Of a DNA stretch of 64,000 nt, positions 6,858 to 62,132 are shown piece after piece (the stretch's first letter is position 1; every line of letters begins with the position of its first letter). The stretch spans positions 19,406,001-19,470,000 of the forward strand of contig OZ004615.1 of assembly GCA_963924565.1 (NCBI GenBank), in the 5' to 3' direction. Below the pieces are notes generated by a model, which searched no databases, was not told the origin of the DNA, and worked only from the letters and a program-made list of their open reading frames with translations. Made by a program: the position numbers and the translations under genes. Origin of the DNA: Ascidiella aspersa. Taxonomy: Eukaryota.

Positions 6858-6973
6858 ATTAACTGAAGATGATACGCAAGCTCTTATCGAAACGTCTTTA
6901 TAATTGAGATGTTGTCGAACTACTCGACCTTTTATGCTTTGCAGTTGATTATCAAGCAAATTTGCTTTTACAG
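6858..6973 (+). mobile_element. Penelope-like/retrozyme-type short element with minimal hammerhead core, family A
   Basis: ATTAA-CTGAAGA(6863-69)-T-GATA[10 nt]TATC-GAAA-CGTC-TTTAT. The tail ...CTACTCGACCTTTTATGCTTTGCAGTTGATTATCAAGC aligns with the minus strand of 25757-25833. Confidence 0.75.
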
Positions 6974-8005
6974 TTGAAAATAAGCTAAGAACTTGCACAA
7001 AATATGTGATCGCTTTTCCAACTAACGCAAAAGTAGACCGCCGGATTCCTGTTTGATGGCGTCACGCAAGCCGAAACTTTTTCGAGAAGGATCTTTAAGG
7101 TTTTCCCCCTCCCCCAATTTTAATTCATCGGCGTGGCGTTTGCGTACAACTATACACAGCGACAGCAGAAAACGGGCTTCTAAACGGTTATTTTTCAACT
7201 CGACCGGGATTAGCGGCGCTGCTGGGACCCGGGCGCATCGATCACTGCATTTGTAAACGGATTCCATTGAGGTTTACAAGCCGACTCGATCGCCACGTGG
7301 TAAAGGCTGCTCTATAGCAGCAGCGGCCGCAATATGAGGCGACTTTCAACTGGGCTTGAACTGCCAACTGCGCGGGTGGCCTCAAAACGGTGGCTTGCTT
7401 CAAAGCCGACGATCACATTGCAACAAAATAACAACAGGCCCGATCCGCGCGCGTTTTTCCAGGAAAAAACCTCCTTTCATGTTTGTTTCGGCAACGGTGT
7501 AGCGCAATCGCCGACAAAACGTCGCAGAATGCAAACACGATTTCCCTGAGTAAAACAATGCCCACTTTTTTGGCAGTTGCGGCACGCTGCGCTCTGGTTT
7601 ACACTGGAGCGTAAATAAAACTGTGCAGTCAATTTTCAATCGACGTTTCAAATACATCGCAAAATGCCACCAGTTTTGAACCCAACCGGAAACTAGTTTT
7701 AGTTGAAAATCGTATACAAAAGTTATTTTTTACCAATTGATGAATAAGTCTAATCAAACAAGCCTGTACTGATAATTTTGGCGATGTATACTGAGTTCTA
7801 CAATCGGGGTGTATGTGTATTGAATCTTGAACGATTGGTACTATGTTTTGGCCGACACTGTACGATTATATTTCAAGAATTTATGATGTAAATCAAACAT
7901 ATATACGTTGTCAAGAACAAATGTTTTTTTCTGTACACAGATTTCTTTAATTTATGTTTTACATTTTTTTTCCACACCAAAGGTTTCTGCTATACACCAG
8001 TCATG

Positions 8006-8461
8006 AAGTGTTGTAAACAAGTCATTTTTAAATGGTTCAAGTCTTAGTCTAAGTCATCAACTAGCCAAGTAAAGGCCAGTCAAGTCGTTAATATAGCAAG
8101 CTAACTTCAAGTCAAGTCTGTGTCATAAAAAATAAAACCTTAACTGATAAAGTCGTTTGATTATGAGCAATAACTCGAATACAAAATAACGAAAACGCAA
8201 CATATAGCCAGCAAATTATTTTTAGTGCACCAATTGAAATAAAAAACATCATTTTATTGAAAACTTATTGAATGAAATAACTTGATTTTAACCCAAGTTA
8301 TTTGACACAATGACTAAAGTCAAAGTCAAGTAATTTGTACAAAAGATTAAGTGAAGTCAAGTTGTTTTAACCAAAATACTTAAGTCAAGTCGATTCATTT
8401 CAAAACAGTGACTTAAGTGCACTTAAGTCTATAGTCATTGACTAAAGTCATTACAACACTG
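8006..8461 (+). mobile_element. AAGTC-rich hAT-like MITE, most complete copy
   Basis: TIR (A)AGTGTTGTAA ... TTACAACACTG. Flanks CAGTCATG/CAGTTTTG match 6/8 (degraded 8-bp TSD). Dense AAGTC/GACT subterminal repeats, with homologous segments at 10.6, 31.5, 37.9 and 42.8 kb. Confidence 0.8.
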
Positions 8462-8586
8462 CAGTTTTGTCAACCTGAAACCCACTATATTATAAAGTGT
8501 CCCGTGGGCAACTTGTTGACGACAATAGACGGCCACTCGATATTCGACGGCCCACCTACTGCAGTCAAAACAACAACGCCGCAGCA

Positions 8587-8620
8587 CCTACCCCTACCCC
8601 TACCCCAAACCCCAGCCCCC
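8587..8620 (-). repeat. (CCCCTA)n-like hexamer run, telomere-variant-like; potential G-quadruplex on minus strand
   Basis: cctacccctacccctaccccaaaccccagccccc contains five C4-5 tracts. Confidence 0.6.
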
Positions 8621-9246
8621 ACTGTGGGTACGTATCCCCTTTCACTTGCATTTCGACAACTCGTTGGGGGGCTCGATTTCAACGCTGCCCCCGTCTGTTT
8701 GGTTTTGGGTCAGCGACGAAACGTGCACCCCACGCAAGCCCCCGAATAATGCACAATGCCCCCGGGTAAAAGATCAAGCCGCCGGGGTCGGGATGAAATA
8801 AGGGGATACGTTTATAGCATGTTGTCGGCTATTGTACCCTTAAAGTAATTGTCATATGGAGCAAACTTTAGATTGAGCATGAAAACGAAGGCTGAATTGT
8901 CAGATTTCTTCGAAAAATGCAAAGAATGAATATCAAAGCTAAAGTAAACTGGCCTACAAATTCATCGTTTTATAATTCCACCAAGAACAGACGGAGGCTA
9001 CGTCTAATAAACGATTTCGAGGGTAAAACTAACGTTTTCTGTATGGTTAACACATAAATTAATACCTTGTTTACACAGTGCTCAGCACAAACTGTAAGCT
9101 TGCTGAACAATGTTATCCATTTAGTGCCAGTGCAGTATTGTATTAAGCCACGATATGCTAATCTCTTTTTTTTCGTTTATTTGTTCAATGCCACCTAATT
9201 AATTTCTTAAATGTTTGTTTTTTTGTTTCGAAATTATTATCTAAAC

Positions 9247-10147
9247 CAGTGGTCTCCAACCTATGGGTCGCGACCCCAAGTCGGGTCGCCTAAAATTTTT
9301 CTGGGGTGATGTTGTTGTTGTTGTTTCGTTTGTGCCAAGATTTTGCATTATTCCGGGCTAGATTTTGGGGCAGATGTTGGCCAGCCAGTATATTGTTTGG
9401 TCGTCCAAATTCTTCAGACCATGCACTCCATGCGGTGCTCGTAGAATTCTGCACTCCTCAATGACGTGATCTACGGTTTGTTCTTCCGCACCGCACTCGC
9501 AGTCGGGGCTAGGCCCCATTTGTACATTGTTGAGCTAAAACGCCCAACACCTGTTCTCAACCGGTTAACAGTGATGTCACACTAATAGACGTGACTGAGT
9601 ACATAGCAAAGATAAGCCTTTCTACATAAACTAGGTGTTTTTAGCTCTTAGGACCTGCTAGGTTACAAATATTTCAGCAAATATTTATTTTTGGACTTTC
9701 CGTTTTCAACCACATGGCTTTGTTTAACGAAATTCAGCGCAATGAGCATTACTAAAAACGAAACATCGTAAATCGCTTGGAAGTAGAGCATGCCATGCGG
9801 TTATGCTTATGCAAAGTTTTTTAAAACTGGTGGACACTATGCAGGCGCAACCATCACACAAAATGCAATTTAGTGTTGAAACAATTTGAATTTTATGTGT
9901 TCGTTCGTGTGCTAAATTTAAATTCATAATTCAAATAAAACTTCCTAAAAGAAATCATTTTAATGCACAAATGTAGCTACAGCTTTTTAATGTGTATAAT
10001 TTACGCATATTTGCTCATGTTACTTAGTCCCAGCATTATTATATATATATTTTATTCCTATCTGAAAACAAAATGGGGTCGCAATGTAAATTCTGATTTT
10101 ATTTTATTTAAATTGGGGTCGCTTATTGAAAGGGTTAGAGACCACTG
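9247..10147. mobile_element. Non-autonomous hAT (Charlie-like) MITE carrying a nested LINE fragment
   Basis: TIR CAGTGGTCTCCAACC / GGTTAGAGACCACTG, subterminal GGGTCGC repeats at both ends, and 8-bp TSD ATCTAAAC/ATTTAAAC (7/8). Confidence 0.9.
9313..9570 (-). mobile_element. 5'-truncated non-LTR retrotransposon 3' end (I-group, Ingi/Vingi-like ORF2 C-terminal zinc knuckle)
   Basis: Minus strand reads VNRLRTGVGRFSSTMYKWGL / frameshift / SPDCECGAEEQTVDHVIEECRILRAPHGVHGLKNLDDQTIYWLANICPKI* (stop at 9358-60), then a short 3'UTR and (CAA)n tail. Flanked by GTGATGT direct repeats (9306-12, 9571-77). Confidence 0.85.
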
Positions 10148-10559
10148 ATTTAAACAACATAAAAGCAATAATTGTGTCTAAATCGACATGCCCGTCGCCA
10201 AATGTATTACTCATCATTGTTGAAAAAGGTGGCTAACCAAAGTCAAACTAAATTCGGCTCAAGCCTTGTTAATATAACATCCATCTACTGGGCCCGATTT
10301 GGCACTGTTAGTTCAACAGTGACCACATAAATCGTAACACTGTTTGAATATACTTTAAGCGACTGTGATAGGAATAATATTCAAAAGATTAACCTAGTTC
10401 CAACGTGTTTGATTAGATGGCGTGCGAATAGCCTTGTCTTTGATGGGCGCCCTACCTCATCGTCAAGTGCAGGCGTATATTACCAGAAATGAGCTCATTA
10501 CGCTGTCCGAACAAAGGGTACAAGTTTAAGGTTATTTGATTCTTCCATTATTTTCTTAG

Positions 10560-10972
10560 TTTTTTAAACTAGTCCTTCTGAAGTGACTTAAGTTACAGTC
10601 AAGTAAATTTACAAAGTCCAAGTAAACTAAACAATTAGTCAAGTCAAGTCCAAGTTACGTAATTTTCATCTAAAACAAGTTCGTGTTCAAAAGACTTGAA
10701 AAAATGGTGAACACGTTCCCAACCTGAGCAATATTTCGCTTAGCAAGCAACACAAACGAAACGTAAAGCAAGTTAATATTTTTACATTCATTAATTGGCG
10801 TGAATAAGTATATTTAATTAAATCACTAAATTCTTAAATTCAGTTCAAGTCGCATAGATGATGTTTAAGTCCAGTCATTCATCCAATTAATTCAAGCCAA
10901 GTCATTTGAAACCAGGGACAATAAAAGTATGCACTTAAATTAACTCAACTGACTAAAGTCATTACAACATTG
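10560..10972 (+). mobile_element. AAGTC-rich MITE copy (5' end degraded, start approximate)
   Basis: 3' end GACTAAAGTCATTACAACATTG matches the 8006-8461 terminus, and there are many AAGTC motifs. Confidence 0.7.
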
Positions 10973-13419
10973 TGTTTTCTTGGAAAAATTTGGCGTTTTT
11001 TTTTTCAGAGCGCTGCTTAAATTTGAGATAGGTATTTCGAGGACACGCCAAAAACAGTTTTCTTACGAGTTAACGACATCCGACTTAAAACAAACCGCTT
11101 AAAACAAATAACGGCAGCAGTTAAAAATAATTGAGCAATTTTCTTGAATAAAAAGGCAAAACAAACAAGCATCGGAAGGACGCATGCCGATGCATAAGCG
11201 TCCTAGAGAGAGGGAAAATGTATACGTGAAGTGTCGAAAAATGTTTGTTGCTTCAATTCATTATATTCCGACCTTGGCTGGCCGATAGCGATCGGGAGTC
11301 GCGGCCCTTCGGAACAATTTAGTCGCAATTACTCGGGTCGAAAAGCACCCTCCCCCATTCCCGGCCCAAAACTGCCCTCCATTCAAAGGCGGGATTGGCA
11401 GATAGCGTCGGCGTCATGGCCGATAAGCATCAGTAACATGTTGCCAGCATTGAGGCCCTGGCCATTTGGCGTATACGCGTTCTTAAAGACACTGCATTTG
11501 TGCTTTTTGTGTTGGCGCTCTCTCAACCTTTGCTTGCGCATATGTCGGGCTCGATATAATTGCGCACGCGAGTGAGGGGCAGAACGATTTGTCGGCGCGA
11601 GTGAAAAGCGTAATTGCACGGGAAAGCCTAAATTGCGAAAGGTCGGTGCACGCTTTTATCTTTCCCGTGAGCCTAAAGTTTATAGGCCATAGTCCAATCT
11701 TGCAATTGGTCGACCATCGCAGTTTTGCAAAACGGTAGGCTACTTTAAAAAATGAATAGTAGAACAAAAGAAAGACAGAAGGAGTATGTATGAAAAGTGG
11801 CACACGCAAAAAGTTGCTAATTAATTTAGTAAATTGTTTTTTATTCTTTGACTGATGTTAATACAAATGCGTATTAAAAGCTCTTAATTTACATGGTGTC
11901 AATCTGCCTATTTGATTTTGACATTCATATTCAAGCAAATTTAATTCTATTTTGAAATTATTTTAATAAATATAATAAAACCATCTAGCAGGACAGCCAA
12001 GAAAGTGTTAAAAGTCCGTAGTCGTGTGTTTCTTTCCACCGGTTTTTACATACACCCGGATTACGGATATAGCGAATCAAACTTAAAGGTTTCGTGCGGC
12101 CTTGCACGTTTTATTGCTAAGAAATCACTTCAAACCTCGCCGTAACCTCTTCCACAACCTTCAGGCAAATCTCAAGATTGGCGACTTACCAGAGAAAAAG
12201 CTTACTGCAAATTACAGATCAAAGGTTCGCAACCTATCCTTTCAAAACTACACTGACGCATATTAAACGGCAGTGATAAGTCAATGGGTGAGTGAAGTGC
12301 GCATTTTTGTCAAATTACTCAATCTAACTTAAGTCTTTGATGCAAAGTTACCATATATGACTTGGTCATTTAGCTAAATGACTACAGCCAAATGATTACT
12401 TTCTTAACGGTTTAGAGGCAAAAAACACCCCTTTTTGTAAAAAAAAAACAATTCTTGTAGTTTTGAACGCCTAAACAAAAAACTGTTTATAAATATGTTT
12501 AAGTATGAGTGAATTTGGTTAACTGATGTTTGAAATTGGGTTTGCTTTTCTAACTGGAAATAAAAGTTTGAATTTAAGACGGGCCATTTCCACGAGACGT
12601 TTACCAAAAGCGAGGATTCAATTCCTAACTTGAACTTGCATCAGCTTCAAACGAGGAAACATTTTGCTAATAATCAGGTCCGACGTGAAACCACTTTATG
12701 CCGCGCCTTGAAATTGGCACATAATACGATGCAATGCGGTCTACGTCTAAGTCATGAGCATCAAACGATGATGCCAAACGGCCAAGCTGCTCTCACATAA
12801 ACTCTTAGAAAACGCTCAATCGCTGCACAAAATTAGACAGCTGTGAGTGGACGAAAATGCCTCGGCAGGTGTCCTTGACTCAGTCGCCCAGCATGCATAT
12901 CTATACATCAAAGCGAAACCGCCAGCGTAATTGGCCTTCTTGTGCGCTTGGGAAAATCGCCTTTAATGTATAAGATATGTGTCGCAGGCCTACACTTAAA
13001 ATTGCGAAATACACTTAGGCGCGGCGCCGGTTTCTTTTGTTCTGACTTATGACCTTCTCATTTTAAACGAGAACTTGCCGGTCCGGACGCCGGGAGTCAC
13101 GTTTTTCAAAATACGTCAAACGTAATTTCTGCACAAAATCTATGCATTTTTTGGATAATCGTCAAAAACGCAAAAAAGAGGAAAATTTTTAAAGCGGGTT
13201 AAATTTCGAAATATTGTTAAGTTAAGACAAAGCAACTGGTTAACTCGTTTACGACGAACTTATTTATGTTTATAAAAAAGGTCTGGACAAACTATAGCTT
13301 TAAGATGACACAACTTTTAAACAAATCACAAGAATAAACTGAAAACCTTAAAGCCAAAAATCATCCAAGAAAATAAAAGTTTTCACAGAATATTTTGATC
13401 TATAATAGAGCTTTGAAAC

Positions 13420-13639
13420 AGAAACTTTTGTACACTAAACACGGATCTGTTCATAATCTTCAGTAGAAAGAGAGTGGCCCAAATAATAGATAAAAGATTC
13501 ATTCTTTTATTAGCAAACGTTTCGGCAAGTGCTTTTGCATCATCAGTGCGGTAAGTGAGGCTAAGATAAAAACGAGTCACTATATAGAATCTTTTATCTA
13601 TTATTTGGTCCACTCTCTTTCTACTGAAGAAACTTTTGT
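13420..13639 (-). mobile_element. Hairpin insertion with hammerhead-like core, family B
   Basis: 44-bp inverted arms 13457-13500/13587-13630 (1 mismatch). The loop on the minus strand reads GCA-CTGATGA-T-GCAA[6]TTGC-C-GAAA-CGTT-TGC-TAATAAA. 12-bp direct repeat AGAAACTTTTGT at 13420-31 and 13628-39. Confidence 0.8.
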
Positions 13640-16600
13640 GTTGTAAATGTTCTAGTAGTTAATACTTAATATTGGAACTTAAATTGCCTATTTTTTGTCC
13701 CAAAGTGTAGTTATAAGTCCGGTACCAACCACTCGCCTTGTGTGTTCTTTTTAGGCAATCCAAAAAAAGTGAAAGGCCCGCTTTTAAAATAACGTCAGTC
13801 GCCAAAAAGAGGAGAGGACAGCCCATTTTTTGTTATCCCCAAACCTCGTCACTTCTGAAGCGCAACGGGCACCTTGCAGCAAAAACGACAAGACATCGGC
13901 GCCTTTAAAGTTCACCCAGCGGCGGTCAAGGACCCGATTTCCGGCGGGAAAGGCCGGGTTGGGCCCGATGGGCCCCAAAAATCGAACACTTTCATCGCCG
14001 GCGTGCGCTCAGGAAACCGGCCATCGCTCTTGTCACGGTACGACCGGCCAAACATTCCTGTTTCCCCTCAACAATACCCAAAAGATCGCATGACGTAATT
14101 TGTGACGTACAGCACGTGGGTTGGTGGAAAACGGAACCGTAAATTCATCGCGGGAATTGACAAAGCGAAAGCGAACGCTCGTGAACGTACTCGGAATCTT
14201 AGTTGCATAAATTAAACCAGCATTTTTTTTTCGCACCGCATTTGTCACATGGGGCTTACAAGCCAAAATGTACCTCCTTAAAAAAAATATGCTAGATTTT
14301 ATACCGCTAAAAAATGCCGCTAAATGTTGGAAATACGATGCCTGGAGACTTTGCCTTGGAAAATGCCAGCCGCACGAGGGATTTAGGTATACAAAAATCA
14401 CCAACAAAATACACTTATGTATTAATGGAATAAAATAAACATGGGGGTAACGACCAGGTTTAATAAAATAATTTAAAATTTTGCATACTGTGAATTATTG
14501 CTCTTATTCTATTGCGACGACGGTAAAAAAACTTTAATTTATTATTAGTTGATTTTCTTACGGAATTAGGTTTTAAACTTCTTTGATCAGAAGTCGTATT
14601 TTCCATTTCGGAGGTTTGCATGTTTTGAGTCGAATATTTAACGAAGGAAACGATAAGATGTCTTTATAGAATCTATACGATTCGGTTTTATGAATTTTAT
14701 GACAAAATATTGCGCACTAAATTCATGTGAAAAATTTCCAACAAAGAAAATCGCGTTTTGAATACAGGTCTGGGGCGCAGATATATCGCGTGTATATTTT
14801 TGACCTTTGAACATTCGTAAAACCAACGATATGCGAATCAGATTAAAATCGACAAAACCTTTTGTGCCGAATTAGCGTGGATCGATTTTTCGCTTTGTTC
14901 ACTCCCAACGATTTGGGATTGACAAATGGTGTAATCGTTAACGGAAATTCGACCCCAAATAAAACTAAACAGCATTTTTTCTGACGTAAATACATCTACG
15001 TGAAAAAAACTTAATGTGAAACCTAAGAAAAACGGGCATTCAACGTTGCGTAAAATCATACACTAATTTAGTAAATAAAATGCAAGTTTCTTAAAATTGG
15101 CCACATTGAGGTAAATGCTTTTAATAACATTCATTTTCTAAATATTACCATGTCGAAGTCGATCTAATCGATATTTTGAGCTTTAGAATACGTTGTCAAG
15201 CTGCATTACAGATGTACCTAATTACTTCCAGTCATCGGCATTTCGGCAGCAAACAACAATACCATAACAATCGATTTTACAAGCCAAAATGCGACTTATA
15301 CTTCGCCCAACAAACAACCAAGTGCAGTTAACCCAGCAAAAGGCTCTAGGAGGGTGGATCTGTGGTATCAACCTGTCTTTTGAGCCCATTTATAACTTAT
15401 TTCAAACTTCGTCTGTCGCTTCAAAAATTGGGCTACATTATTCCGCCCTATTCTCACTCAAAATATGCTTTTTTAAAATTTTTTTTTTCATGTTCTCACC
15501 TGCTTTTGTCAATATAGAAAATTCGCCTTTCAGCTAAATGGGGTTCCTCAGCGGCGGCGAAAAATGCCAAAGCGTGGCGGTGATTGAAAATTAAACGTCC
15601 GGTTTGTGCTAGGCCAAAACGTTAAAACGACGGCGGCATACGCGACCCTTGTTTGTCGATTTGTGAGCGATTGAGTGTAATTACCCTAATTGTGAGCGCA
15701 AAACAGAGCAGACGTTTTCGGGTGCTAATTATCGTATTCGGAAGCCGAAGTGCTGTACGACAAGACACCAAAGTGGTCAAATCTGGGCAGCGACACTAGT
15801 TAAAGTTAGGAAGTGGGAAATTGGATGGGCGCTCTTTTGCTAAAAATGTACAAAAATCTTGACAAACTTTCGTACAACCGTTCTTCGTCTGGTCAAAGTA
15901 TAATTTAGCATTAGACAAATACGGCAATCAACAAAGATTTGAATAATGTTAAAATTCAAAGTACGTTTGGCAATTAAACCCATCCATGGGGAATACATTC
16001 TTTGAGCATAAAATCTGATAAAAGTAGGTGCCCGACCGTGGCCTGCTGCTGTGAATTGTAAGTTAAGCGTCTTCTCCAATAATAATAATCCCTGCAGCCG
16101 CGAACGGTCGAATTTCCGCGTACGCTTGCCGAGTCTGTAGCTACTCAAACAACTTGTATTTGCACTCGGGGCATAAGGCGCACAGAAATAGGCCCCAACA
16201 ATCCATCTATCCTTGTATAATTCGGCGGCGCGCCTCCCCACGCGGCTAAACTACCTCGTCAAGCGGCGTACAGCCGTCGACTTTCGCTGCCTGCGCCCTT
16301 ACCAGCGACGCACTGTTTCTGCATAAACACAAGGCAGAAAGCAAATACCGTTACGGCTATTTGGCTTTCTCTTGCTAATCGATTTAGGGCTGCTTTGCGT
16401 TGCTTCCCGCGCCAGACAAAAGCACTGCACTACAATAGTCAAAAAAGGTGCCAGATTCTGCGGCGATCCGGGCGCTATTTTCCCGTCGATGGAATTGTCG
16501 CGACCCGATCCTATGATGTCGCTCTTTACTGGGCACATATTGCTGCTGCTCGCACCGCTTCCTCTGCTTGCTATTTGCTTAGATCCTCCGAGCCACTTCA

Positions 16601-18268: not shown

Positions 18269-20640
18269 CAGGGCTTTTAAGTGTCGATGGGAGCCACTTA
18301 AAAAAAAAAATTGTCTTTAATTTTCTTTTTAAATAATTCACACCAGGCAAAAACTATCCAAAAAACAAATGTTTACATCCCTTTAGGTAAATGATTTCAC
18401 TTCATACGATTTTACCACTACACGTTAAGGTATTATATAATTTTGTAAAGACCAAATGCTCAGTGACAATCATAGACAACTCGTCATATTACTGGGAATC
18501 TGCTTGCGCACCAATGTCGGCATTTTTAAGACAGGTCGACAACAACCGGTTTACCTAAAGGGCGCATTTTTTCTCTTGCGCCACAGCTAACTCTGTGCTA
18601 CTTTTGAGACAACCATTTAACCTGTTCGGCAAAGCCCCACTTTTATGAACGAGACCTGAAGGCTAGCCAGCACCTGGACTGCGCTTTCACTGTTCTACAG
18701 GCTGCCTGAAAACAGGCCTTTCTTACAGCGTATAGCGTACATCGGCGGCCCGGGCAGCGGCGACGGGCCCTGGGCCACAAATTGGCCGATCGTCTCGAAA
18801 TTTCACGCAGGAGCCGCAGCGGCAGAAAAAGGTCCCTTTTAACTCGCCGCAGACGGCTGGATCTCTCGCGCGCCCGCATTTCATCGCCTGGGCTCAGCTC
18901 AGCTGCAGCAGCAACAGCGCAGCCAGAAAACGTCGCTTTTCTGGCCTGGGCGCTCTGCTGGCCTTAATGGACTATCGCGCGGACCTCGGGCTTTGATCTG
19001 CGCTTCGTAGGCGCGGTCACGGTTGCTCGAAATTCGAGTCACGTGTTGCCTCGAGTGACCAATCGCGCGGCGCCGCTCCACTCGAAAGTGCTTCTTCGAT
19101 AGTAGCCTCTGAACTGCATTTTTTTGTTGTTTTTTACAGAACAAAACTTATATGGCCTTGCTTTTATCAGAGTGACTGCAAAATTTGCTTTTCAATTTAA
19201 ATTCAAGTTTTTGTAGTTTAGGTATGAATGCTCTAAAAAAATTCGGTATGGCGCAATTGCTAACAATCCAATGGTTTCACCTGCTATATCAAATCATACA
19301 ACTTCACACAATACATTCTCTCGCAATTAGCGCAAACTTTTTGCAATGGCCATACTAGCAATGCTTTCAAGTCAAGCCAATTCAGACTGCACAATTATCG
19401 GCATTTGATGATCGCACCAAAAAGGCTGTCCACTGACCATTTATTTCGTTTTCTCGCTAATACGAACCAGTCTTTACACACTGCAACCAAAACGTTCACT
19501 GGCTTGGAATTCCGATCACCAACAGTTTGCTAGCTTTATCTCTTACTTGAAAAGAACTCAACTCGAGGCTAAACGGCTTTTCGGAGTCTCGATTTTAACT
19601 GCTGTGCGCAGTGTACAAAGCACAAAAGCAGCGCTATTCGCAACAGTAAGCATCAGCAACAGTGAAAACCACCACCAGCACCGGCACCAGCAGACAACAG
19701 ACTTCAAACGTTACTCGCAGCTCGCGACGGTTTTTAGCCGCGGCCGCGTGTCTTTTGCCGCCGGTATACGCTTATTCGATTGCGCGGCAGATTAAGGACT
19801 GAAAGCCGGCGCTGGAATGTTTATAAATATCGCATGTCCGCCGCCGCCGACGACGACAACGAATCCGCCGCTGCTTTGTCGCTTTACGGACGGTTATTGT
19901 AGCGAGTGCTGGCCTCGGCCAATTTTTCGGACCAATGTGTTGATATATCTCGACCGTCGTTTTTAACTGAAAAAATAAACGCTTTAACGCCTATGTTCCG
20001 AATCCCGATGCAACTGAGGTCTTTGCGTATCTTCTCCCGAAATCAGCGGCTCCTTATCAGGATAATAACAGGATGCACTGAGGCTGCTGCTGCTGCTTCA
20101 GTGACTTCGTGAAACAATCCGACCTTCGGCATTTTGATCTGCGTCGTCATTGAGGCTGGTGTACTTTTGCGGCCTTGCGCTGTTCAATTAGCGTCTGTTT
20201 CGCTATTTGAAATAGTAGACATTTTTGGCGTAAATTAAAGGGCCAAGCTTTTTAATAAAAATGATGAAAAATGTAAAATACCGCTATAGATCAAGCGTGT
20301 TACATCATAGCAATTATAATATGACGTAAATCAGATCAAAAACTATTTCAAATAATACTTCACAAGTCATTCGAAATTTAACGCAATTTGTCAGAGACCA
20401 CTAAATGTTCCGCAGGTGTTCGTTTGTGGATTGAGAAAGGTTATTATGTTCAACCAAAGCTTTTGTGATATTTGAGGCACTCGAAACTTTCGCTTTATCG
20501 AAATACCGCGAGAGAGCAACGTATTTAATCTCATTTTCAAGTTCTATCGGTGCAATAAAAGCCCACTTCAATTCCTATCAGTGCAAATTTCAAAAAGTGG
20601 ATTATTTTTAGGTACACTATGCACGGATCTGTAATTTAGG

Positions 20641-20773
20641 TTAATAATAATTGTCAAAGTCTAAAAGGTCGAGGAAATCGACATCATCTTGATGAAGAAG
20701 TTTCTTTTAACTGATGATGATACAAGCGCGTATCGAAAAGTGGATTAATTTTTGCTTGTATATTATTATTTAA
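20641..20773 (+). mobile_element. Hairpin element with hammerhead-like core, family A (cleavage region degraded, right arm partly deleted)
   Basis: Inverted tail AAAAGGTCGAGGAAATCGACATCATCTTGATGAAGAAGTTTC followed by TTAA-CTGATGA(20711-17)-T-GATAC[6]GTATC-GAAA-AGTGGA-TTAA; same junction as the 25.8 kb copy. Confidence 0.7.
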
Positions 20774-25726: not shown

Positions 25727-25949
25727 GCCATTAACATGGGTAAACTTTGCACATATCTGTAATGTATAGCTTGATAATGTACTGCAAAGCAAAAAGGTCG
25801 AGTAGAACCACATCATGCTAATTAAGGCGTTTCGAGTTTGTATCATCTTCAGTTAATGATGAAACGCCTTAATCAAGATGATGTCGATGTACTCCACCGT
25901 TTTGGCTATGCGATTTAACATCACGCCATTAACAATTTGACTAAACTTT
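25727..25949 (-). mobile_element. Hairpin element with hammerhead-like core, family A
   Basis: ~50-bp imperfect arms 25784-25833/25861-25911. Minus strand ATTAA-CTGAAGA-T-GA[7]TC-GAAA-CGCC-TTAAT (25857-25821). Flanking direct repeat GCCATTAACA...TAAACTTT (25727-48, 25925-49). Confidence 0.75.
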
Positions 25950-28094: not shown

Positions 28095-28288
28095 ATACCT
28101 GGCTTTCGATCATAATGGTTGGATGTTGAAGTAAGACGTAGTAGAAATATCAAAGCCCATATAGCAGTATAGGTATCATTTTGAACGTTTCGAATATATT
28201 ATTATTTATTTTCAACATTTGTTCATTCAAAATGATACCTATACTTCTGTATGGGCTTCGATAGTCTTACTACGTCATACCTGGCTTT
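28095..28288 (-). mobile_element. Hairpin insertion with degenerate hammerhead-like core and perfect 12-bp TSD
   Basis: 51-bp arms 28135-85/28226-76 (45/51) and TSD ATACCTGGCTTT (28095-106, 28277-88). Loop on minus strand TTGAAAA-T-AAATA[6]TATTC-GAAA-CGTT, three transitions away from CTGAAGA-T-GAATA. Confidence 0.75.
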
Positions 28289-42200: not shown

Positions 42201-42535
42201 TCGCCAGACGTGAATTGCATTAAATTTGATTGGTCAAAATATAACTGAACGCTACATTTCTGAAGGACGTGAATAAAAATTAGCATCAAAAAGCGACAGG
42301 TTGGGGTTAAGGCCAGCCCGCTTAACTTTATGAGCCGCGAGATTTCAGATTTCAGAGTGTTAAATCGAATTCATTATAAAAACCATAATAAAGATATAAA
42401 GCGTCCGTAATGCATTTGCACACTTGCATCGGTATATAACAAACCGCGCACATACCAGTAAGCAATTAAACATCGTCGGATGTGAATTGCATTAAATTTG
42501 ATTGGTCAAAATAACAGAACGCCACATTGCTGAAG
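42201..42535. repeat. ~65-bp direct repeat pair, 272 bp apart
   Basis: 32-bp identical core GTGAATTGCATTAAATTTGATTGGTCAAAATA at 42210-41 and 42482-513. Confidence 0.9.
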
Positions 42536-52003: not shown

Positions 52004-52709
52004 CTCTAGATATAAAAGTCCGGCCTTGCAAGTTGCAACAACTTGGAGTATATTTGTAGCCGTGAAGTTCAATTATGAGCCAAACAAATCAATAAGGAAC
52101 GGAAGTGGCTCCATAATCGTGTGAAACTCGCTTTCGTCGGCGCAAAGTACGGGCCTTTTCAAAGCTGCTGGATATTAAACACAAGTACATGGGCGTTTGA
52201 TTTGCTCGTGTTCGGCACGTGTGCTCGGTGTAATACACGCGCGGTCGCGACTCGAAAATAGCCATCAAACTACGGATTTAGAAGCTATTATCCGGCAACC
52301 TGCACCTTAGCACCGCCGTCAACCCCGCACTCAATGCCCACTAATCACAGTCCGTAACTGGCCGTCCCGTAAATCGCCTGTGAAACGCAGTATGGCTGTA
52401 TCCCGCGCGGGGTTACGGGGCGGTAAATTGCCGCTCGCCAAAGTTGTGCGAATGTTTTTGGCCGACGGGCGGGTGTTGATTAGGATGGCCGCTTTAAACG
52501 CGGAGCGCGATTAATTGGCGGCTTGCGCCTGAAATTTGGTGTTTTGAAGTTTCATAACGACTTTCGCTCTGGTGCTTTGCACGTGTGCGATGATTTCGCC
52601 CAATTTGCCGCCGAATCGGCCGCGGTTTGGTTTACTAAGCATACTATTTTACAAAAAGGAAAGAGAGTTTTTGGACACCATACACGTTTTTTTTAGTATT
52701 TTCAATAAA

Positions 52710-52821
52710 AATATCAAAGCCATAATATTCGATAAAATCAACATTTCGCAGTTTACAAACGTTTCAGCAATACCTCATGCCATCATCAGTGTAAACAAAC
52801 AAGTGAAGATAAAAGCGATAA
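52710..52821 (-). mobile_element. Short insertion with the best-preserved hammerhead-like fold, family B
   Basis: Minus strand 52796-52751 reads GTTTACA-CTGATGA-T-GGCA[8]TGCT-GAAA-CGTT-TGTAAAC (7-bp stem I). 25-nt tail and a 13/16 direct repeat at 52710-25/52806-21. Confidence 0.75.
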
Positions 52822-53184
52822 GACAAGAGAGACTGGTTAAAAAAGTCTAAAGGCAACGCTTTTAGCCGATCTCACTAACAACCGCGATATTTTCAAAAAC
52901 TAAGTTTCGTTGGACGGAGAAAACAATTGTTATTGCCTGGTTAAACGAAATGTACGAAGACGCCAATATTTTGACTAAATCATTTGTTGAAAGTTAAGTT
53001 GTATCACCGCCGCTAACCAGTTGCGAAAATGCTACGAATTTACAACACAACACGTTTAATAAAATGTAACAAGCTATTTTTTATCGCACCTTAAACACGT
53101 TTATTCTATTAATTGCTAAACATTTTTTTTGACATTTAATAACTAATATTTTGGCCAATTTTGTTTTGCCTTTTAATTATAAAA

Positions 53185-53394
53185 CGGTTATAATATGTTT
53201 CACGAAAATGAGGTTTATAGGTCTACTAAACTGACGTTCAGGGGTACATTTCCAAGAAACACTAAAAATCACAAAACGTTTACGCGGTTTTCAGCCGTCG
53301 TCTTCTATTTGAAAACCGGTTATAATATGTTTCTTGAAAAATGGGTCTGTTAAACTTACAATCTAAGGGGTAAATTTTCAAGAAACACTGAAAA
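53185..53394. repeat. Diverged ~80-bp direct repeat pair
   Basis: CGGTTATAATATGTTTC...AGGGGTA.ATTT.CAAGAAACACT.AAAA at 53185-268 and 53317-394. Confidence 0.8.
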
Positions 53395-56300: not shown

Positions 56301-59300
56301 TCATTTTAAAGTAGGCGATGGGACTCACAAGGCCTCAGGCTCACCGAGTTAAAACCAAATGGCCTAAGACACATTTAGAATATTTTTTTTTTGCATTTGC
56401 ATAGTTAAAATAGGCAAAAAAATATGGCCCTTGATCAGCCACTGCTTACATATTTGGTTTAAATACCTGTTTTATGAACATATCACATTATGAAAAGCAT
56501 TTTTAAATTGTTTAAAGTGTGTTTAAAGTAGACATCCAACAAAACTAAAAACTAATAACGTTTATTTCTTTGAAATTTGAACCTAGCTAAACAGGTCTCG
56601 TATTGCGGCAAATTATCTCCGGTTTAAATCCAGTCAACACTAGGTGAGTAATAATTCTAATTGATCTTTATGCAAATTAAGTTCTATCAATATTACTTCA
56701 TTCTCACAAATGTTGCTACAAGAACTAAACGAAGGATTGTAACATAACCAACTTTATGTCAAGTATTGTCAATTTCTGCCTTCCGCAAAATGTAATCGTC
56801 TTCGTCAGTTGGTGTCGGTTGAATTTCACAAGTAAATTTATTTCGTTTAAAACCAATTACCCAAGTCGGGTCATTTTGACAGATGTCTTAAACTAGATAT
56901 CACATGTTTTACATCATTGCGTTTCGTCGTTAAAATAAATCACCCTAGCGGCAAAAAAGATATCACGTACACCCTAAAATAGAGCAAACATCATTTTAAC
57001 GAGCAATTCTGGTTTAAAATCGGGTCAAATGTCTTGAAAACAATTGTCGACCACGGTGGATGAAAGCGTTCTTTGCACGACAACCAAAACGCAGAGTGAG
57101 GGCAATGGCGTCGATGGGATTTTAGAGTCGGCTCAGCCATTTCCGGGCAAGCGTTAGTCTAAAGACTGTGAAAAGAGCCCAGGCCATAAGCGTCGAGCAA
57201 AACGTCAGCGACTAATCGCATCGGAAATGGCCGCGATCGCTGGCTTCAATTACCTGTAACTGCTGCACTGACAGAAAGACAGACTCTCGCCCGTCAAGCC
57301 GGCGACGCGCTCCGGAATTGATGCGCGGAAATAAAAGCCCGATCGTTTGCGATTGAGCTATTTCGGCCGACAGCCAGCCTTCAAAGGGAGGCCGTGAATT
57401 TGAGTTGAACGCCAGGGACTTCAAACGGCCGCTTGTCGCTTTCTGCCGCAAGCCCGTTTAAGACAAGTCGCCTTGTTTCAAGGTTTAGCTATTTGCTGTT
57501 AGATTACCGGCGGTCAGCAACCGCGGTATAGCTTACCAGCAGTGTTACCGCGAAACAAATGCTCAGCATCCGTTAGGCCATTTGTACAATTTGCTCTTCG
57601 TGCATTTGAGTCACTTACACAACTTATAGGCGAGAAATCATTCTATTTTTCGACACAAATTCAAACCTAAACGTGGACAAATTGTATGAACATTGAAAAG
57701 CACAAAAACAAGTAGCTTATATACGCGATTTCGAAGTGTAATTTGTTTTGTCGTAAAACTTGATACATATTCCACAAAGTTTGTTTTATCAGGGCTCCTG
57801 TAGCTCAGCCTTATAATATGTATGCTCACTAAATTTAGCATTTGGTCAGTTAAATTCGTTTTTTAAAACGAGCACTGCTTTTCATCAAAAGCTTTGTTAT
57901 CCGCCAGAAACGTAAGGCACTAATTATAAGGCAAACATTCGGCCATAGTCGCACCAAAAGGAATTGAAAAAATCTCTAAAATTTAAAAGCAAAATCGCCC
58001 CACGATAAAATACTGCCCGCTTGACAAAGGTGAGTTGGGTAAAAGCGAAAAACCATTAAAGTCCGTTTGTCCATTACCGCCCAATCCGGACACTGACCAC
58101 CAGCTTTGAAGTTGGCCATTACGTCGGTTTTCCAGTTGGGCCCAGCGGTCGATTTGATCGGACTTAACTACATCTCCCATGTTATCGGAGTGCGCTGGAC
58201 ACCTGATCAATTTCACTTGCCCCCCTGGCTCGGCGCTTTGAACTAACGAGCCCGTATTGATACAAGTAATGCGCCCACAAATATGGACGAGGCTTTTGGC
58301 GAAAACATGCCGCGCTTCCGGGAATAAAAACACCTTTGAGCTCTCATGTTCGATTTTCGTTGGGGGGTGGTCCTTTCTTGAAGTATTTTGCTCTTGCGCT
58401 TATTATATTGGCACTTTCTTGTCAGGGATGTTCTCAGGGTCGTCACAAATCTTTAAAGGTCTTTGAATTTATTTTATGTGTAGATTAGGTGTTTTGAAGT
58501 GCCTTATTTTTTTAAACCATAGTTGTTGTGTTTAACGTGCGGCATTTGTACAATTTGTTTTGATTTATATTTAACATTTGTCGAGTGATAAAATTTTAGG
58601 TCCTTGAAAACCTATAAATTTTCTATTTGAATTGACTTTATAGAAAAGTGTGGCAAACCTGATTCGATATGTGCAGAAGTTGCGATTTCGTGAGAAGCAA
58701 ATGTTTTAGTATAATCGGGTTTAAATAACGAAAGCCAACGCCCTTAAAAACATTAGGACAAAATATCCCACCACGACCTTTTAAAGAAATGTATTTTTAC
58801 ACGTTACCGTTGTCGGCACTTCAAGAGTATGCCGTGTTGTCTTCAGACAAATCCTGGGTGTTACTTATTTGCTGACGTGTACTTGTCAAGTCAAACTTCA
58901 AATGTGAGAGTAAATACACCCCGGAACTAATCGCTTCAAAATATATTATTCGGTCATTACCAGTGAGCAGGCATTTTACACAGTGTTCCCTGTACTAAAC
59001 TGTCATACTGAGAATTTTTTTTTTCACTGAGCATGACCAATTTAAGGCTGATTAGGCCGAGTTTACCAACATAAGAAAAAAGTACACTTTTAAATAACAA
59101 CTATATAGTTTCTCCTTGTCTTGGTGCTTTTCGGATATGATGAGGTCAGCTGGCATGTTGCCGAAGCGGTGGCTACTAACTTTTATTACACTCGAAGAGA
59201 TCCTTATCTATTTAAAACGTTATCCAGGTTTTTGCTGAATTTTGCCCCAGAAAAATAGTTTTAAACTTGTAGCGATGCAAGTGCGCAAGAACTACATTTA

Positions 59301-60754
59301 ACTGCGCAAACGGTAATATCGTAAAGTGGGTTACTTGGAGGAAACACTAGTGTAAGTTTAACTTCCAGCGTCCTATTTTTCCGAGGACACCTTCGCGGAA
59401 TTTGTGCGCGAATTGATAAGCAGCAGAAAAACTACGTTTCGTTCCTGAAGCAACTCGAGTGGAAATGTCAGCTCAAGTCGGTTTCCAGGTGTCGGGCATT
59501 ATCGCCGGAATCTAAATCCGCGCGCAGTAACACGCTGTTACATTTGTAAGGCGCCCACAACACACGATTTGTGACCGCGCAGTTGCTCAGTTCAGATCGT
59601 ATCTTCCACAAGCCTTCTGCGGCAAGCGACATTCCGCGGTCCGACTTGTAACGTACGACAGGTGCAATTGTTGCACCAAAATTTCAGAATCCTTATACTT
59701 AACGGCCTGTCGGATGCCAAGCGCTACACTAACTGTCTTAATACTGTATTATTTTAAGCGAACGCAAATGAAATAAAAAAGACGTAAAACAATAAAGGCG
59801 GTCAACGTATAAAAAGGAGCAGCAACGTGATTTGCAAAAGTGTCAAAATGTTTTCCTATACCCTGCCAAAAGCCCAACTGCCATCATTTCCCTCGGCGGT
59901 TTACAACTATGCAACAAGGGACAAAATCGGTAACGAAAGAGTGTGACAGACGTGCAAACGATAAAATTAAGCTTGTAACGCAATCTAGTTCCGCGTTGTC
60001 ACCGACACGGAGAAAAGACGCGAAAATGCTGAAAAAACGCTCGGTTGAAACGACGTCAGGATAACTGGTTCTCAAGAAAATTTTAGGTCATGCTATGACG
60101 TAATGAATAATTTGCGGCTCTAAAATTCTACTATCTATACAAGACGCTTTGTTGTGTTTTTGAAAGAGAAATACAGAGCGCACAAAAGTCATTAATCGAT
60201 AATTTTAAAACAAATTAAAAAAAAACATATATTAACTTTCTTTTCTGTTTAAAAAAATAACCAATGTTTGTTTTTAGGAGAAAACAACTCTAAACAAACT
60301 AAATGACTTTGTAAAATCTTCCCGCACTAAATAATTTCCAGACTCATGTGTGACCTAAAAATGGAGACAAATCCGCCAGATTTCACGCAACCTGCAATTT
60401 AATTAATAAGCACTCTAACACGTGTTCCATGCGGCAACGAAATAACTCCACAGAATTCCTAATCTAGTGAGAAAAGGCTTGCTATAAAAATGTGTTAGTC
60501 GCATATGGACCTGTACAAAGAAACTTGTTCTCAGAAAATAGTAAATTAATCAGTCTCAGTAAATGAAGATCACATTGAGGTTAAACTTGACCGCATAGCC
60601 TTACAAATACATTTGTGAACCTTTTATTTGTTTTATTTTGATTATTATGTTTATTATTATTGGGTATCGGATCGTACACTATTCGCCACAATGCCGGGTC
60701 TCGTACAAATGAGTAGCATACAGCACTTAAACCTTAATACTTATGTTTATTCAG

Positions 60755-60854
60755 ATTCCGGATCTATCGATCTTCTTGCACTATCGCTGGCCGAAAACCC
60801 TGCTTTCCCGACGGGCGTCGAACTTATCAAAGAAAAGGGGGTGGTTGGATACAG
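60755..60854 (+). CDS. Internal exon A of a TSPN/laminin-G domain protein (TSPEAR-like N-terminus)
   Basis: Acceptor TTTATTCAG| and donor CAG|GTGAGT; 100 nt, phase 1 to 2. (D)SGSIDLLALSLAENPAFPTGVELIKEKGVVGY(R) resembles TSPEAR DLRPLDILAE...SGIRIVQVHGARGL as recalled. Confidence 0.8.
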
Positions 60855-61416
60855 GTGAGTTTTCAAATTGGGCGTTATACGGCAACAGTGGGATGCATAA
60901 AATCCTGTTAACCTCGAAGTACAAATAAGACATATTTGTTTTTACTTGCCAACATTGCGATCGTAACACTATTCGTTATACTATTGTAAGTATGGGAAAT
61001 GTTTAAAAGATACCTCGCACTTGAAGAAGGTTTGCATACAATTCTTTGAAAAGCCTTACCGGGTGTCGTGATGTCAGTAATGATGACGTATGTATAATCT
61101 TAAATAAACTTAAAACGGTCATTGGATAGCGACAGCATATGTGGGGCACTCGCTTTTTTCATTACTATTGACAATATTAGTTAGCTTTTTAAAGCAAATG
61201 TAGTGCATCACATAAATATTGGCAACAAAATTGTTGTTTGTTGCATAGGACTGTTAAAATTTTAGTTTAATATTACTATAAAAAACGCAGCGGTTTAGTC
61301 TGCCAGAACAATTTTAGCCAAGTTACACCATAGAAGCAAACATATATTAGTGTTGCACGATAGGTTATAATTGCCGTATCGACCAAATTTTCAAAAAACA
61401 TTTCGTTGACCTTCAG

Positions 61417-61567
61417 GTTTGACCCGGAAGCGCGGCTGTTCGGAGTCTACGCGGCAGAAGTGATGACAAAATGCAAATATTTCCCACACGAGTTTTCGTT
61501 GATCGTGACATTTCAACGGAAGACGACCAACAACGACAACGAGTACTTGCTAACACTTCTAGCCCAG
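61417..61567 (+). CDS. Internal exon B of the TSPN/LamG domain protein
   Basis: Acceptor CCTTCAG| and donor CAG|GTGAAA; phase-compatible with exon A. (R)FDPEARLFGVYAAEVMTKCKYFPHEFSLIVTFQRKTTNNDNEYLLTLLAQ carries the C-x-x-FP-x-EFS-x-x-VT ... NEYLLT signature. Confidence 0.85.
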
Positions 61568-61635
61568 GTGAAATGTTAACGACGCATTACACGCTCACGA
61601 AGTGTCTGACGTTATCTCTTTTTGTTAATGGGAAG

Positions 61636-61710
61636 CCATCCGTCTATTGGTGTACATCTAGATACTGTTTTCGAATGATTGATGTAATGGTAAAACTCGT
61701 TTTCGAATCG
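61636..61710 (+). CDS. Candidate exon C (possibly frameshifted or with shifted acceptor)
   Basis: Strong donor TCG|GTAAGC. An AAG acceptor gives in-frame PSVYWCTSRYCFRMIDVMVKLVFES, but a second frame from 61631 (GSHPSIGVHLD) fits the domain better and lacks an AG. Confidence 0.4.
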
Positions 61711-61992
61711 GTAAGCGTGGTATTTTTAGGCCGTTTGGTCACTCTTTTTTTTTGGCGAGTTAAATATAATTTTTGTAACGCTAACACCCCGAACAACATG
61801 AAAGACCTAAGAAAATATTATGAATCTCATATATTTTAGCCTTGTTTTGCAGTTACACTATAAATAGTACATACAGCTTAACCTTTTTTTGTGTATCGAT
61901 TATTATTACAGTGTATTTCTAGATTTTTGAGTTTTGTAGAAATAACAACTTTAGAACACTATATACGGATTTGTTCATAAGTTTAATGATGA

Positions 61993-62132
61993 AAATAACG
62001 GCCCAAATAGACGTTAAAAGCGACATGCATCACTGATGATGGCATTACAAATTGCCGAAACGTTTGAAAATAAAGCATGTCGCTTTTAACAACTTTAGGT
62101 TTTTTATGTTTTTTTAAATAAGCACGGCCAAT
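61993..62132 (+). mobile_element. Hairpin insertion with hammerhead-like core, family B, within the TSPN gene in sense
   Basis: Perfect 16-bp arms GTTAAAAGCGACATGC (62013-28)/62075-90 enclosing TCA-CTGATGA-T-GGCA[8]TGCC-GAAA-CGTT-TGA and AATAAA (62069-74). 25-nt tail and a degenerate AAATAA..CGGCC.AA direct repeat. Confidence 0.78.

What the first reader, a model, noticed from the sequence alone, without database searches (positions are those of the whole stretch)
6858..62132. Dispersed family of tiny hairpin retro-insertions, each built around a minimal hammerhead ribozyme core
Seen: seven loci (6858+, 13513-, 20706+, 25821-, 28183-, 52751-, 62030+) share CTGAWGA-T-[stem II]-GAAA-CG-Y-Y or a degraded version. 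Stem II pairing is kept although its sequence differs (GATA/TATC, GATAC/GTATC, GGCA/TGCC, GCAA/TTGC). Five loci show the same geometry: direct repeat, inverted tail copy, core, tail, ~25-35 nt unpaired extension, direct repeat (perfect 12-bp repeats at 13.4 and 28.1 kb; only a 7-bp arm at 52.7 kb). Known: CUGANGA...GAAA...UH is the hammerhead core; minimal type-I hammerheads with palindromic stem III occur in pseudo-LTRs of Penelope-like elements, which often insert with inverted termini and a short tail. Inference: these are ~100-220 bp non-autonomous PLE/retrozyme-type elements, at about one per 9 kb, that a MITE annotator would mislabel.
Basis: partly seen in the sequence, partly recalled or inferred. 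Interest (0 to 1): 0.9.

Follow-up and report, generated by a model that had tools for sequence, protein, structure and literature searches.

The report
Penelope-type hammerhead mini-retroelements, mostly dead copies
The seven small hairpin-like repeats are real copies of short retroelements of the Penelope type, each carrying the minimal hammerhead-ribozyme motif described for this group in 2014, so they are an ordinary though very abundant part of this animal genome.

Summary
Six of the seven loci carry CTGAWGA, one extra T, stem II, then GAAAC (6 hits against 0.43 expected). The seventh, at 28.2 kb, is not degraded: it carries the published U3-A8 covariant core.

Genome-wide, the two exact cores occur 2,044 and 2,021 times, against 6 and 65 for reversed-pattern controls.

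The loci belong to at least five repeat families, each with 600-1,460 or more first-look candidates. All seven are flanked by target-site duplications of 7-18 bp. Copies have two outward-facing arms, or one copy with an inverted 5' piece. In about 90% of 60 copies examined, a ~30-nt "tail" sits on exactly one end. This is the published insertion signature of Penelope-like elements (PLEs).

The genome holds RT + GIY-YIG PLEs with the same kind of hammerhead. The 13.5-kb locus is a 5'-truncated end of a related PLE family. The other loci look like short non-autonomous derivatives.

I found no tandem units, no RNA circles and no read ends at the predicted cut. "Retrozyme" is therefore unsupported, and cleavage is untested.

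Earlier follow-ups of this scan reached the same reading on other DNA of this genome. Verdict: new member of a known kind.

The parts
6856..6957 (+). Family 1 single arm ending at the short end, with no tail and no inverted arm. The hammerhead core is at 6863-6896 and helix I is decayed to 2 bp. An imperfect 8-9-bp target duplication lies at 6846-6854 / 6959-6966.
   Evidence: consensus arm positions 1-97, 86% identity.
13432..13627 (-). B-type copy. The inverted arm is about 13585-13627. The direct arm runs 13588 to 13432 and is 5'-truncated 41 nt upstream of the core. The hammerhead is 13546 to 13516, with a 1-nt deletion in stem II. The tail is 13460 to 13432. A perfect 12-bp target duplication lies at 13420-13431 / 13628-13639.
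15155..15213 (+). Additional family 1 fragment (consensus arm positions 51-109) without a hammerhead.
20611..20735 (-). Family 1 single copy with an inverted 5' piece. Arm positions 32-125, including the tail, lie on the minus strand (20704 to 20611). Arm positions 4-33, the 5' part of the hammerhead, lie on the plus strand (20707-20735). The target duplication is 17-18 bp at 20593-20609 / 20736-20753.
25737..25924 (-). Family 1 two-arm copy. The inverted arm with the short end is 25924 to 25861. The direct arm with the tail is 25858 to 25738. The hammerhead remnant is 25852 to 25826; part of stem II is deleted and U16.1 has changed to C. A 10-bp target duplication lies at 25727-25736 / 25925-25934.
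28107..28276 (-). E-type two-arm copy with the U3-A8 variant hammerhead at 28215 to 28184. The 10.1 base has changed from G to A. The tail is 28 nt, 28134 to 28107. A perfect 12-bp target duplication lies at 28095-28106 / 28277-28288.
52668..52824 (-). F-type single arm of about 156 nt. The hammerhead is 52789 to 52758 and is intact by the strict descriptor, with a 7-bp helix I. The tail is about 52700 to 52670. A probable 7-bp target duplication is present.
61955..62090 (+). Family 2 single copy with an inverted 5' piece. Arm positions 49-123, including the tail, lie on the minus strand (62028 to 61954). Arm positions 3-64, with an intact hammerhead at 62033-62064, lie on the plus strand. A 12-bp target duplication lies at 61943-61954 / 62087-62098; 4 of those bases could also belong to the element.

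Best explanation
These are insertions of short RNAs copied into the genome by the machinery of Penelope-like retrotransposons (PLEs). They are mostly old and dead.

Each template RNA is the terminal module of a PLE unit. It has a few to about 70 nt of leader, then a minimal type-I hammerhead: CUGANGA or its U3-A8 covariant, one unpaired U, a 3-5-bp helix II, GAAA, a 2-4-nt palindrome in place of helix III, and UH. About 55 nt follow, up to a first reverse-transcription start site, and about 30 nt more (the "tail") up to a second start site.

Inferred from published biochemistry of a lizard PLE: the PLE protein nicks both strands of an AT-rich target 7-18 bp apart and primes reverse transcription from both nicks. 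One nick uses the inner start site and the other uses the outer one. This gives two outward-facing arms that meet at a variable point, a tail on one end only, and a target duplication. Priming at another internal point gives a single copy with an inverted 5' piece.

The hammerhead is kept in every active lineage, with helices that covary between families. It therefore serves the element's own cycle, presumably as a dimer or with the help of the protein, and not the host. In the genomic foldback copies the cleavage site is buried in the long hairpin.
For: Shown here:
- The core is enriched in the window, 6 hits against 0.43 expected. It is enriched in the genome too: 2,044 against 6, and 2,021 against 65 for the U3-A8 form.
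- Eight motif classes in the window and the fetched loci have different helix II strands, different helix I strands and different palindromes (CG, GC, TGCA, TATA), and all of them pair. The unpaired base after A9 is present in all.
- Families are large. First-look candidates are at least 1,464, 762, 610, 935 and 713.
- Alignments of 30 + 30 copies with their flanks show the inverted arm, a variable inner junction and target duplications of 8-16 bp. The tail is on exactly one end in about 53 of 60 copies.
- All seven window loci have target duplications.
- Single open frames with RVT_1 plus a C-terminal GIY-YIG domain exist. They carry the same kind of hammerhead 185 nt (group i, L063) or about 380 nt (group ii, L077) after the stop codon. 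Many group-i copies have a second hammerhead copy on the opposite strand nearby, and group ii forms a 3,422-bp tandem array.
- B-type units sit 748-751 nt downstream (three cases) or 1,165 nt upstream (one case) of a third reverse-transcriptase group with open frames of 407-848 aa. A fifth case, on C7, has an 880-aa frame on the opposite strand with a different spacing (x 40, 58).
- DNA read depth over the B copy falls from about 1,550 to 284 towards the 5' end, against about 4 in the unique flanks. Reads run on upstream into a conserved sequence.
- A tail motif is shared by family 1, family 2 and the B type.

From the literature:
- The minimal hammerhead descriptor, the unpaired base between positions 9 and 10.1, the U3-A8 variant, dual motifs on opposite strands and single truncated copies are in PMC4209133.
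- The inverted 5'-truncated copy and the 30-40-bp tail at one end are in PMC8557442.
- Cleavage and extension of both strands, two internal start sites that define the tail, and a protein-assisted hammerhead are in PMC11167929.
Against: - No Rfam hammerhead model hits the window, even at E = 10. This is expected, because helix III is missing, but it leaves no independent model-based call.
- Self-cleavage is untested. RNA reads of the B family show no pile of ends at the predicted cut, and 97% run on into unlike flanks. They look like passengers of other transcripts.
- No autonomous parent was found next to family 1, family 2 or long-form family 1 copies (0 of about 40 each, by coordinates; against 40).
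- The two PLE groups whose DNA I could read lack the shared tail motif.
- The samples of 30 copies per family were chosen by similarity to foldback queries, so the class frequencies are biased.
Confidence: 0.85

Rival explanations
1. They are animal (non-LTR) retrozymes: short hammerhead-bearing units that are transcribed from head-to-tail arrays, cut themselves, close into RNA circles, and are copied back into the genome by a PLE enzyme.
For: The ribozyme class and the likely enzyme are the same. A 2026 preprint derives animal retrozymes from PLE terminal repeats. One fetched locus holds two E-like units in tandem (L052:677-982, period 155).
Against: None of the seven window loci is in tandem. 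The arms stop at a 5' end rather than running round into the tail. The RNA reads laid on the B copy gave no back-joints and no ends at the cleavage site. This last point is weak: it comes from one poly-purpose RNA-seq run, 6% of which was read.
Confidence: 0.07
2. They are foldback DNA transposons (MITEs) whose loop happens to resemble a hammerhead core.
For: Many copies fold into stable hairpins (z = -5.7 and -9.3) and have direct repeats at their ends. A weak microRNA-precursor hit (MIR2630, 36.6 bits against a gathering score of 144) covers the 28.2-kb hairpin.
Against: - The arms are unequal, with variable inner ends.
- One end carries a 30-nt extension.
- Duplications vary from 7 to 18 bp.
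- Single-arm copies and copies with an inverted 5' piece occur.
- DNA depth shows a 5'-truncation gradient.
- The B type is contiguous with a reverse-transcriptase frame.
- The core is 30 to 340 times over its control, and the helices covary.
Confidence: 0.03
3. Some copies have been taken over by the host as intronic ribozymes or hairpins that cut or regulate the surrounding pre-mRNA.
For: Two window copies (52.8 and 62.0 kb) keep an intact core. First-stage notes place several copies in introns, sense to the gene. I did not test this.
Against: The copies are decayed at neutral-looking rates. Four of the six window cores of the CUGANGA kind fail the strict descriptor. The monomer arms have no unusual stability (z about 0). 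In foldback copies the cut site is paired with the inverted arm. No RNA ends fall at the cut site in the family tested.
Confidence: 0.05

Closest known systems
Minimal hammerhead ribozymes (min-HHR) of metazoan Penelope-like elements (Cervera and de la Pena 2014, PMC4209133)
   Same: - The catalytic boxes match.
- There is one unpaired base between A9 and 10.1.
- Helix II opens with G10.1-C11.1.
- Helix I is short.
- Helix III is replaced by a small palindrome that can pair only between two molecules.
- The U3-A8 covariant is present.
[quoted passage not shown]
- Most copies are single truncated motifs, some are paired on opposite strands, and a few lie in the terminal repeats of full PLEs.
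   Different: The host lineage and the families are new. I found no paper in the held library that reports these motifs in ascidians. That the genome is an ascidian comes from earlier scan notes and I did not test it.
PLE insertion architecture: pseudo-LTR, inverted 5'-truncated copy, one-sided 30-40-bp tail (Craig et al. 2021, PMC8557442; Frangieh et al. 2024, PMC11167929)
   Same: - There are two outward-facing arms.
- Target duplications vary in length.
- Flanks are AT-rich.
- There are two alternative 3' ends about 30 nt apart, with the longer one on one side only.
- The hammerhead lies about 55-90 nt upstream of those ends.
   Different: Here most copies are only 100-220 bp long, consisting of the terminal module alone. 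Families 1, 2 and F were not seen next to any reverse-transcriptase frame.
Animal non-LTR retrozymes (Cervera and de la Pena 2020, PMC7229834; Li et al. 2026 preprint, 10.64898/2026.07.22.740005)
   Same: They are short, non-coding, carry a type-I hammerhead and are thought to depend on PLE enzymes.
   Different: Retrozymes are head-to-tail arrays that give unit-length RNA circles. The window loci are dispersed single or inverted copies, and no circle was seen.
Twin priming of LINE-1 (5' inversions); recalled from my own knowledge of Ostertag and Kazazian 2001, not read here
   Same: The copies at 20.7 and 62.0 kb have their 5' piece inverted against the 3' piece, with an overlap of 2-12 nt at the junction, all inside one target duplication.
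   Different: The enzyme family is different. In PLEs the second priming usually happens at a defined internal start site, which gives long duplicated arms rather than a simple inversion.

Membership tests
min-HHR of metazoan PLEs | Conserved boxes CUGANGA (or U3-A8) ... GAAA ... UH in type-I order | tested here: met
   The boxes are exact at 6863+, 13546-, 52789- and 62033+, and in the U3-A8 form at 28215-. The 25852- copy is decayed and the 20711+ copy is truncated by the element's end. All family consensuses carry the boxes.
min-HHR of metazoan PLEs | One unpaired nucleotide between A9 and 10.1, and helix II opening with G10.1-C11.1 | tested here: met
   All eight motif classes have the extra base: T in seven and A in PLE group i (read from the motifs). 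Helix II starts with G-C in six classes, G-U in the F type, and A-U in the one decayed E-type copy caught by the script; the E-type consensus has G-C.
min-HHR of metazoan PLEs | Helix III absent or minimal, with palindromic positions 15.2-16.2 | tested here: met
   The palindromes are CG, GC, TGCA and TATA, so ACGU-type sequences can pair only between two molecules.
min-HHR of metazoan PLEs | Helices covary between families | tested here: met
   Eight classes have different helix II and helix I strands, and all of them pair. This is a comparison of family representatives, not a tree-corrected test.
min-HHR of metazoan PLEs | Located in the terminal repeats of RT + GIY-YIG elements | tested here: met
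   In groups i and ii the motif lies 185 nt (L063) and about 380 nt (L077) after the stop codon. RVT_1 and GIY-YIG were found together in one open frame for group i, and in overlapping frames for group ii. For the B type the evidence is coordinates and read depth only. It is not shown for families 1, 2, F and E.
min-HHR of metazoan PLEs | Self-cleavage (as a dimer or with protein help) | not testable with these tools
   RNA reads show no ends at the predicted cut in the B family. This is weak evidence and not decisive.
PLE-type insertion | Inverted 5'-truncated copy, a one-sided 30-40-bp tail, and a variable target duplication | tested here: met
   Searches show exactly one tail in about 53 of 60 copies. 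Window loci have duplications of 7-18 bp.
Animal non-LTR retrozyme | Head-to-tail tandem units, each with a hammerhead | tested here: not met
   No window locus is tandem. Arms in 60 copies never run from the 5' end into a preceding tail.
Animal non-LTR retrozyme | Unit-length circular RNA | tested here: inconclusive
   No back-joints appear in the one RNA run laid on the B copy. Families 1, 2, F and E were not tested.
MITE / foldback DNA transposon | Fixed terminal inverted repeats and a fixed-length target duplication | tested here: not met
   Outer ends come in two forms 30 nt apart, inner ends vary, and duplications range from 7 to 18 bp.

The most novel reading that the evidence does not exclude
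Families 1, 2 and F may be dedicated parasites of a PLE that have been pared down to the hammerhead plus the reverse-transcription start module, about 95-125 nt.

The near-strict "one tail per insertion" rule would mean that a single RNA is copied twice, once from each of its two start sites, by a two-headed enzyme complex sitting on the two nicked DNA strands.

The usual 5' end of family 1 falls right after a splice-acceptor-like TTACTTCTCAG in a longer form of the family.
Probability: 0.25. Interest if true: 0.5.

Novelty: new member of a known kind. Interest (0 to 1): 0.25.

Why it matters
The finding shows that thousands of small "hairpins" in this genome are PLE debris with a ribozyme motif. 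They are not MITEs, microRNA precursors or host ribozymes, and this matters for repeat and non-coding RNA annotation.

The large, well-bounded families give a natural record of PLE integration: two start sites, priming of both strands and inverted 5' pieces. This record agrees with the only in vitro study of a PLE enzyme. It could be mined to test whether the two start sites are used once each per insertion.

Tried and rejected
- **Rfam.** Neither the gathering nor the E-value threshold gave a hammerhead hit. The only near-significant hit, MIR2630 at 28127-28285, is the 28.2-kb foldback itself.
- **tRNA scan.** It found nothing.
- **First strict stem II scan.** This was corrected.
- **ORFs in the window.** Pfam on ten window ORFs found nothing, and no PLE coding remnants are present in the window.
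- **Spliced leader.** The ascidian leader named in earlier notes was not found next to any hammerhead in my 310 kb of sequence.
- **Parent PLE for families 1, 2 and long-form family 1.** No copy lay within 3 kb of a reverse-transcriptase hit among about 40 copies of each (against 40). One family 1 copy lies 3.5 kb from a hit, which is too far to be its terminal repeat.
- **Cleaved RNA as template for the shorter arm.** In family 2 the shorter arms stop 3' of the cut site (29 of 30), but they do not pile up at it. In family 1 they commonly run past it. I rejected this idea.
- **Snap-back self-priming as the origin of the foldback.** It predicts equal outer ends on both arms, and the opposite is seen. 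I rejected this idea.
- **Hand-typed covariation table.** The B-type and E-type consensus cores are therefore cited from the listings only.

Full report
**Observation.** The pattern CTGAWGA, 4-30 bases, GAAAC occurs six times in the 64-kb window, against a mean of 0.43 in dinucleotide shuffles. The sixth, at 42530, has no repeat context. Reading the loci shows the shared layout: core, one extra T, a 4-5-bp stem II, GAAA, CG, then T and a pyrimidine.

Allowing it recovered the loci. Rfam finds no hammerhead at either threshold. That is expected for motifs without helix III.

**Families.** BLAST within the window splits the loci into several groups:
- Family 1: 6858, 20706 and 25821.
- A related set: 13513 (B type), 52751 (F type) and 62030 (family 2).
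- E type: 28183.

Each type is abundant in the window's own genome (308.6 Mb, 75 contigs). First-look candidates are at least 1,464, 762, 610 and 935, plus 713 for a longer form of family 1.

The exact core CTGAWGAT, 10-22 bases, GAAACGTY occurs 2,044 times against 6 for the reversed pattern.

The 28.2-kb locus lacks CTGANGA but has TTGAAAA at the same place. This is the U3-A8 covariant described in 2014. That core occurs 2,021 times against 65 for the control, with the consensus stem GAATA/TATTC.

**Is it a hammerhead?** Across the window and 80 fetched loci, a descriptor modelled on the published one finds eight classes. They have different helix II strands (GGCA/TGCC, GCAC/GTGC, GATAC/GTATC, GCC/GGC, GCT/AGC and others). 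They also have different helix I strands and different helix III palindromes (CG, GC, TGCA, TATA). All of them pair, and all have the unpaired base after A9.

These are the four features that Cervera and de la Pena list as arguing against chance (PMC4209133).

In this window only 52789- and 62033+ pass the strict descriptor; the others are decayed. The odd stem II of the 13.5-kb copy is a one-base deletion. In DNA reads, 329 of 888 carry the extra base that restores GGCAA/TTGCC. The copies next to reverse-transcriptase frames have the restored form too.

**Anatomy of the insertions.** I aligned 30 family 1 and 30 family 2 copies with their flanks. A typical copy has two outward-facing arms. 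One arm reaches a common 5' end, 6-7 nt before the core. The other arm is cut short at a variable inner point. The outer ends come in two forms about 31 nt apart.

The longer form (the "tail") is on exactly one end in about 53 of 60 copies, and it can sit on either arm. Target duplications of 8-16 bp are visible in many copies.

All seven window loci have target duplications: 12 bp at 13.5 kb, 28.2 kb and 62.0 kb, 17-18 bp at 20.7 kb, 10 bp at 25.8 kb, about 8 bp at 6.9 kb and 7 bp at 52.8 kb.

The copies at 20.7 and 62.0 kb are single copies whose 5' piece is inverted against the 3' piece. At 20.7 kb the apparent GAAAAG box is partly target DNA.

The tail sequence is shared by family 1, family 2 and the B type. 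This suggests a common enzyme.

**Link to Penelope-like elements.** A GIY-YIG search of the genome finds two groups of retroelements whose DNA I could read.
[quoted passage not shown] It carries a minimal hammerhead 185 nt after the stop codon. Many copies have a second hammerhead copy on the opposite strand nearby.
- Group ii forms a 3,422-bp tandem array. Its hammerhead lies about 380 nt after the stop codon, between successive frames.

A protein search with the group-i frame lists further, distant reverse-transcriptase groups with open frames up to 880 aa. Crossing those coordinates with the B-type hits places B units in consistent positions:
- 748-751 nt downstream of the reverse-transcriptase match in three cases;
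- 1,165 nt upstream in one case.

A fifth case, on C7, has the frame on the opposite strand with a different spacing. One element also has a hammerhead on the opposite strand upstream.

DNA reads laid on the 13.5-kb copy show depth of about 4 in the unique flanks. Across the element from 3' to 5' the depth is about 1,550, 1,240, 515 and 284. About 220 reads run on upstream into a conserved sequence. The B copy is therefore the truncated end of a longer element.

For families 1, 2 and long-form family 1, none of about 40 copies each lay next to a reverse-transcriptase hit. They look like short non-autonomous derivatives, but the samples are biased and the parent was not found.

**Mechanism.** The literature fits the anatomy closely:
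- PLE insertions often carry an inverted 5'-truncated copy and a 30-40-bp tail at one end only (PMC8557442).
- A purified lizard PLE protein cuts and extends both DNA strands.
- That protein starts reverse transcription at two adjacent internal sites, and the spacing between them is the tail.
- It helps its hammerhead to cut, yet it does not need the cut for insertion (PMC11167929).

I infer that here each nick primes at one of the two start sites. This is inferred, not shown.

**RNA.** One RNA-seq run of the same species label gives low coverage of the 3' part of the B unit on both read orientations. Of the reads, 97% continue into unlike flanks. There is no pile of ends at the predicted cut (13516/13515) and there are no circle joints. 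This gives no support for cleavage or circles, but the test is weak: 6% of one run, a standard library, one family.

Genomic foldback copies fold into stable hairpins that bury the cut site (z = -5.7 and -9.3). Single arms have ordinary stability.

**Comparison and novelty.** Every sequence feature of the published minimal hammerhead is met, and so is the PLE insertion signature. The retrozyme and MITE definitions fail on tested features.

I found no paper in the held library reporting these motifs in ascidians. That the genome is an ascidian rests on earlier scan notes and I did not test it.

Earlier follow-ups of this scan reached the same reading for other stretches of this genome. I checked their claims only where stated. 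This is a new member of a known kind.

**Left out.** Full-length B-type elements could not be read.

Noticed in passing
L027:1331-1400 (minus) and L041:1110-1180; genome-wide: Family 1 has a long form with at least 70 more bases at the 5' end (at least 713 first-look candidates). The usual 5' end of the short form falls right after a splice-acceptor-like TTACTTCTCAG in the long form. The 2014 paper reports the same relation between an intron end and helix I for Drosophila virilis Penelope.
   Followed up: partly
L062:394-3147 (G000:C11): A small contig carries bacterial-looking genes: a 571-aa frame with a GIY-YIG domain like an excinuclease, and a Rho-like ATPase frame. It is probably a bacterial contaminant or symbiont contig in the assembly.
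   Followed up: no
G000:C2 0.33-1.03 Mb, C3 0.07-0.36 Mb and 39.11-39.43 Mb, C1 0.003-0.06 Mb, C5 0.17-0.27 Mb: Many of the best F-type matches lie near contig ends, at spacings of roughly 75-130 kb. They share one orientation per end, with the 3' end pointing outwards. This looks like large subtelomeric segmental duplications that carry one insertion.
   Followed up: no
G000:C9:23485701-23494499 and C2:30628752-30640503: These are head-to-tail arrays of coding PLEs. One has a 2,671-bp period with open frames of 698-816 aa. The other has a 3,422-bp period.
   Followed up: partly
window 13364-13771 (table 5): One contig of run X2 skips 408 bases that include the whole 13.5-kb element plus about 70 and 130 bases of flank. 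It may be a haplotype without the insertion, but it is not a clean empty site.
   Followed up: no
window 28127-28285: There is a weak Rfam hit to a plant microRNA precursor family (MIR2630, 36.6 bits, gathering score 144). It is simply the foldback of the E-type element, and shows how such copies can be misannotated.
   Followed up: yes
L052:677-982: Two tandem units of 155 bp are related to the E type, with a decayed core. This is the only head-to-tail arrangement seen in the sample.
   Followed up: no
whole window: The window holds 4 exact matches to the first genome-wide pattern, where the genome average predicts about 0.4 per 64 kb. This stretch is about ten times richer in these elements than average.
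   Followed up: no
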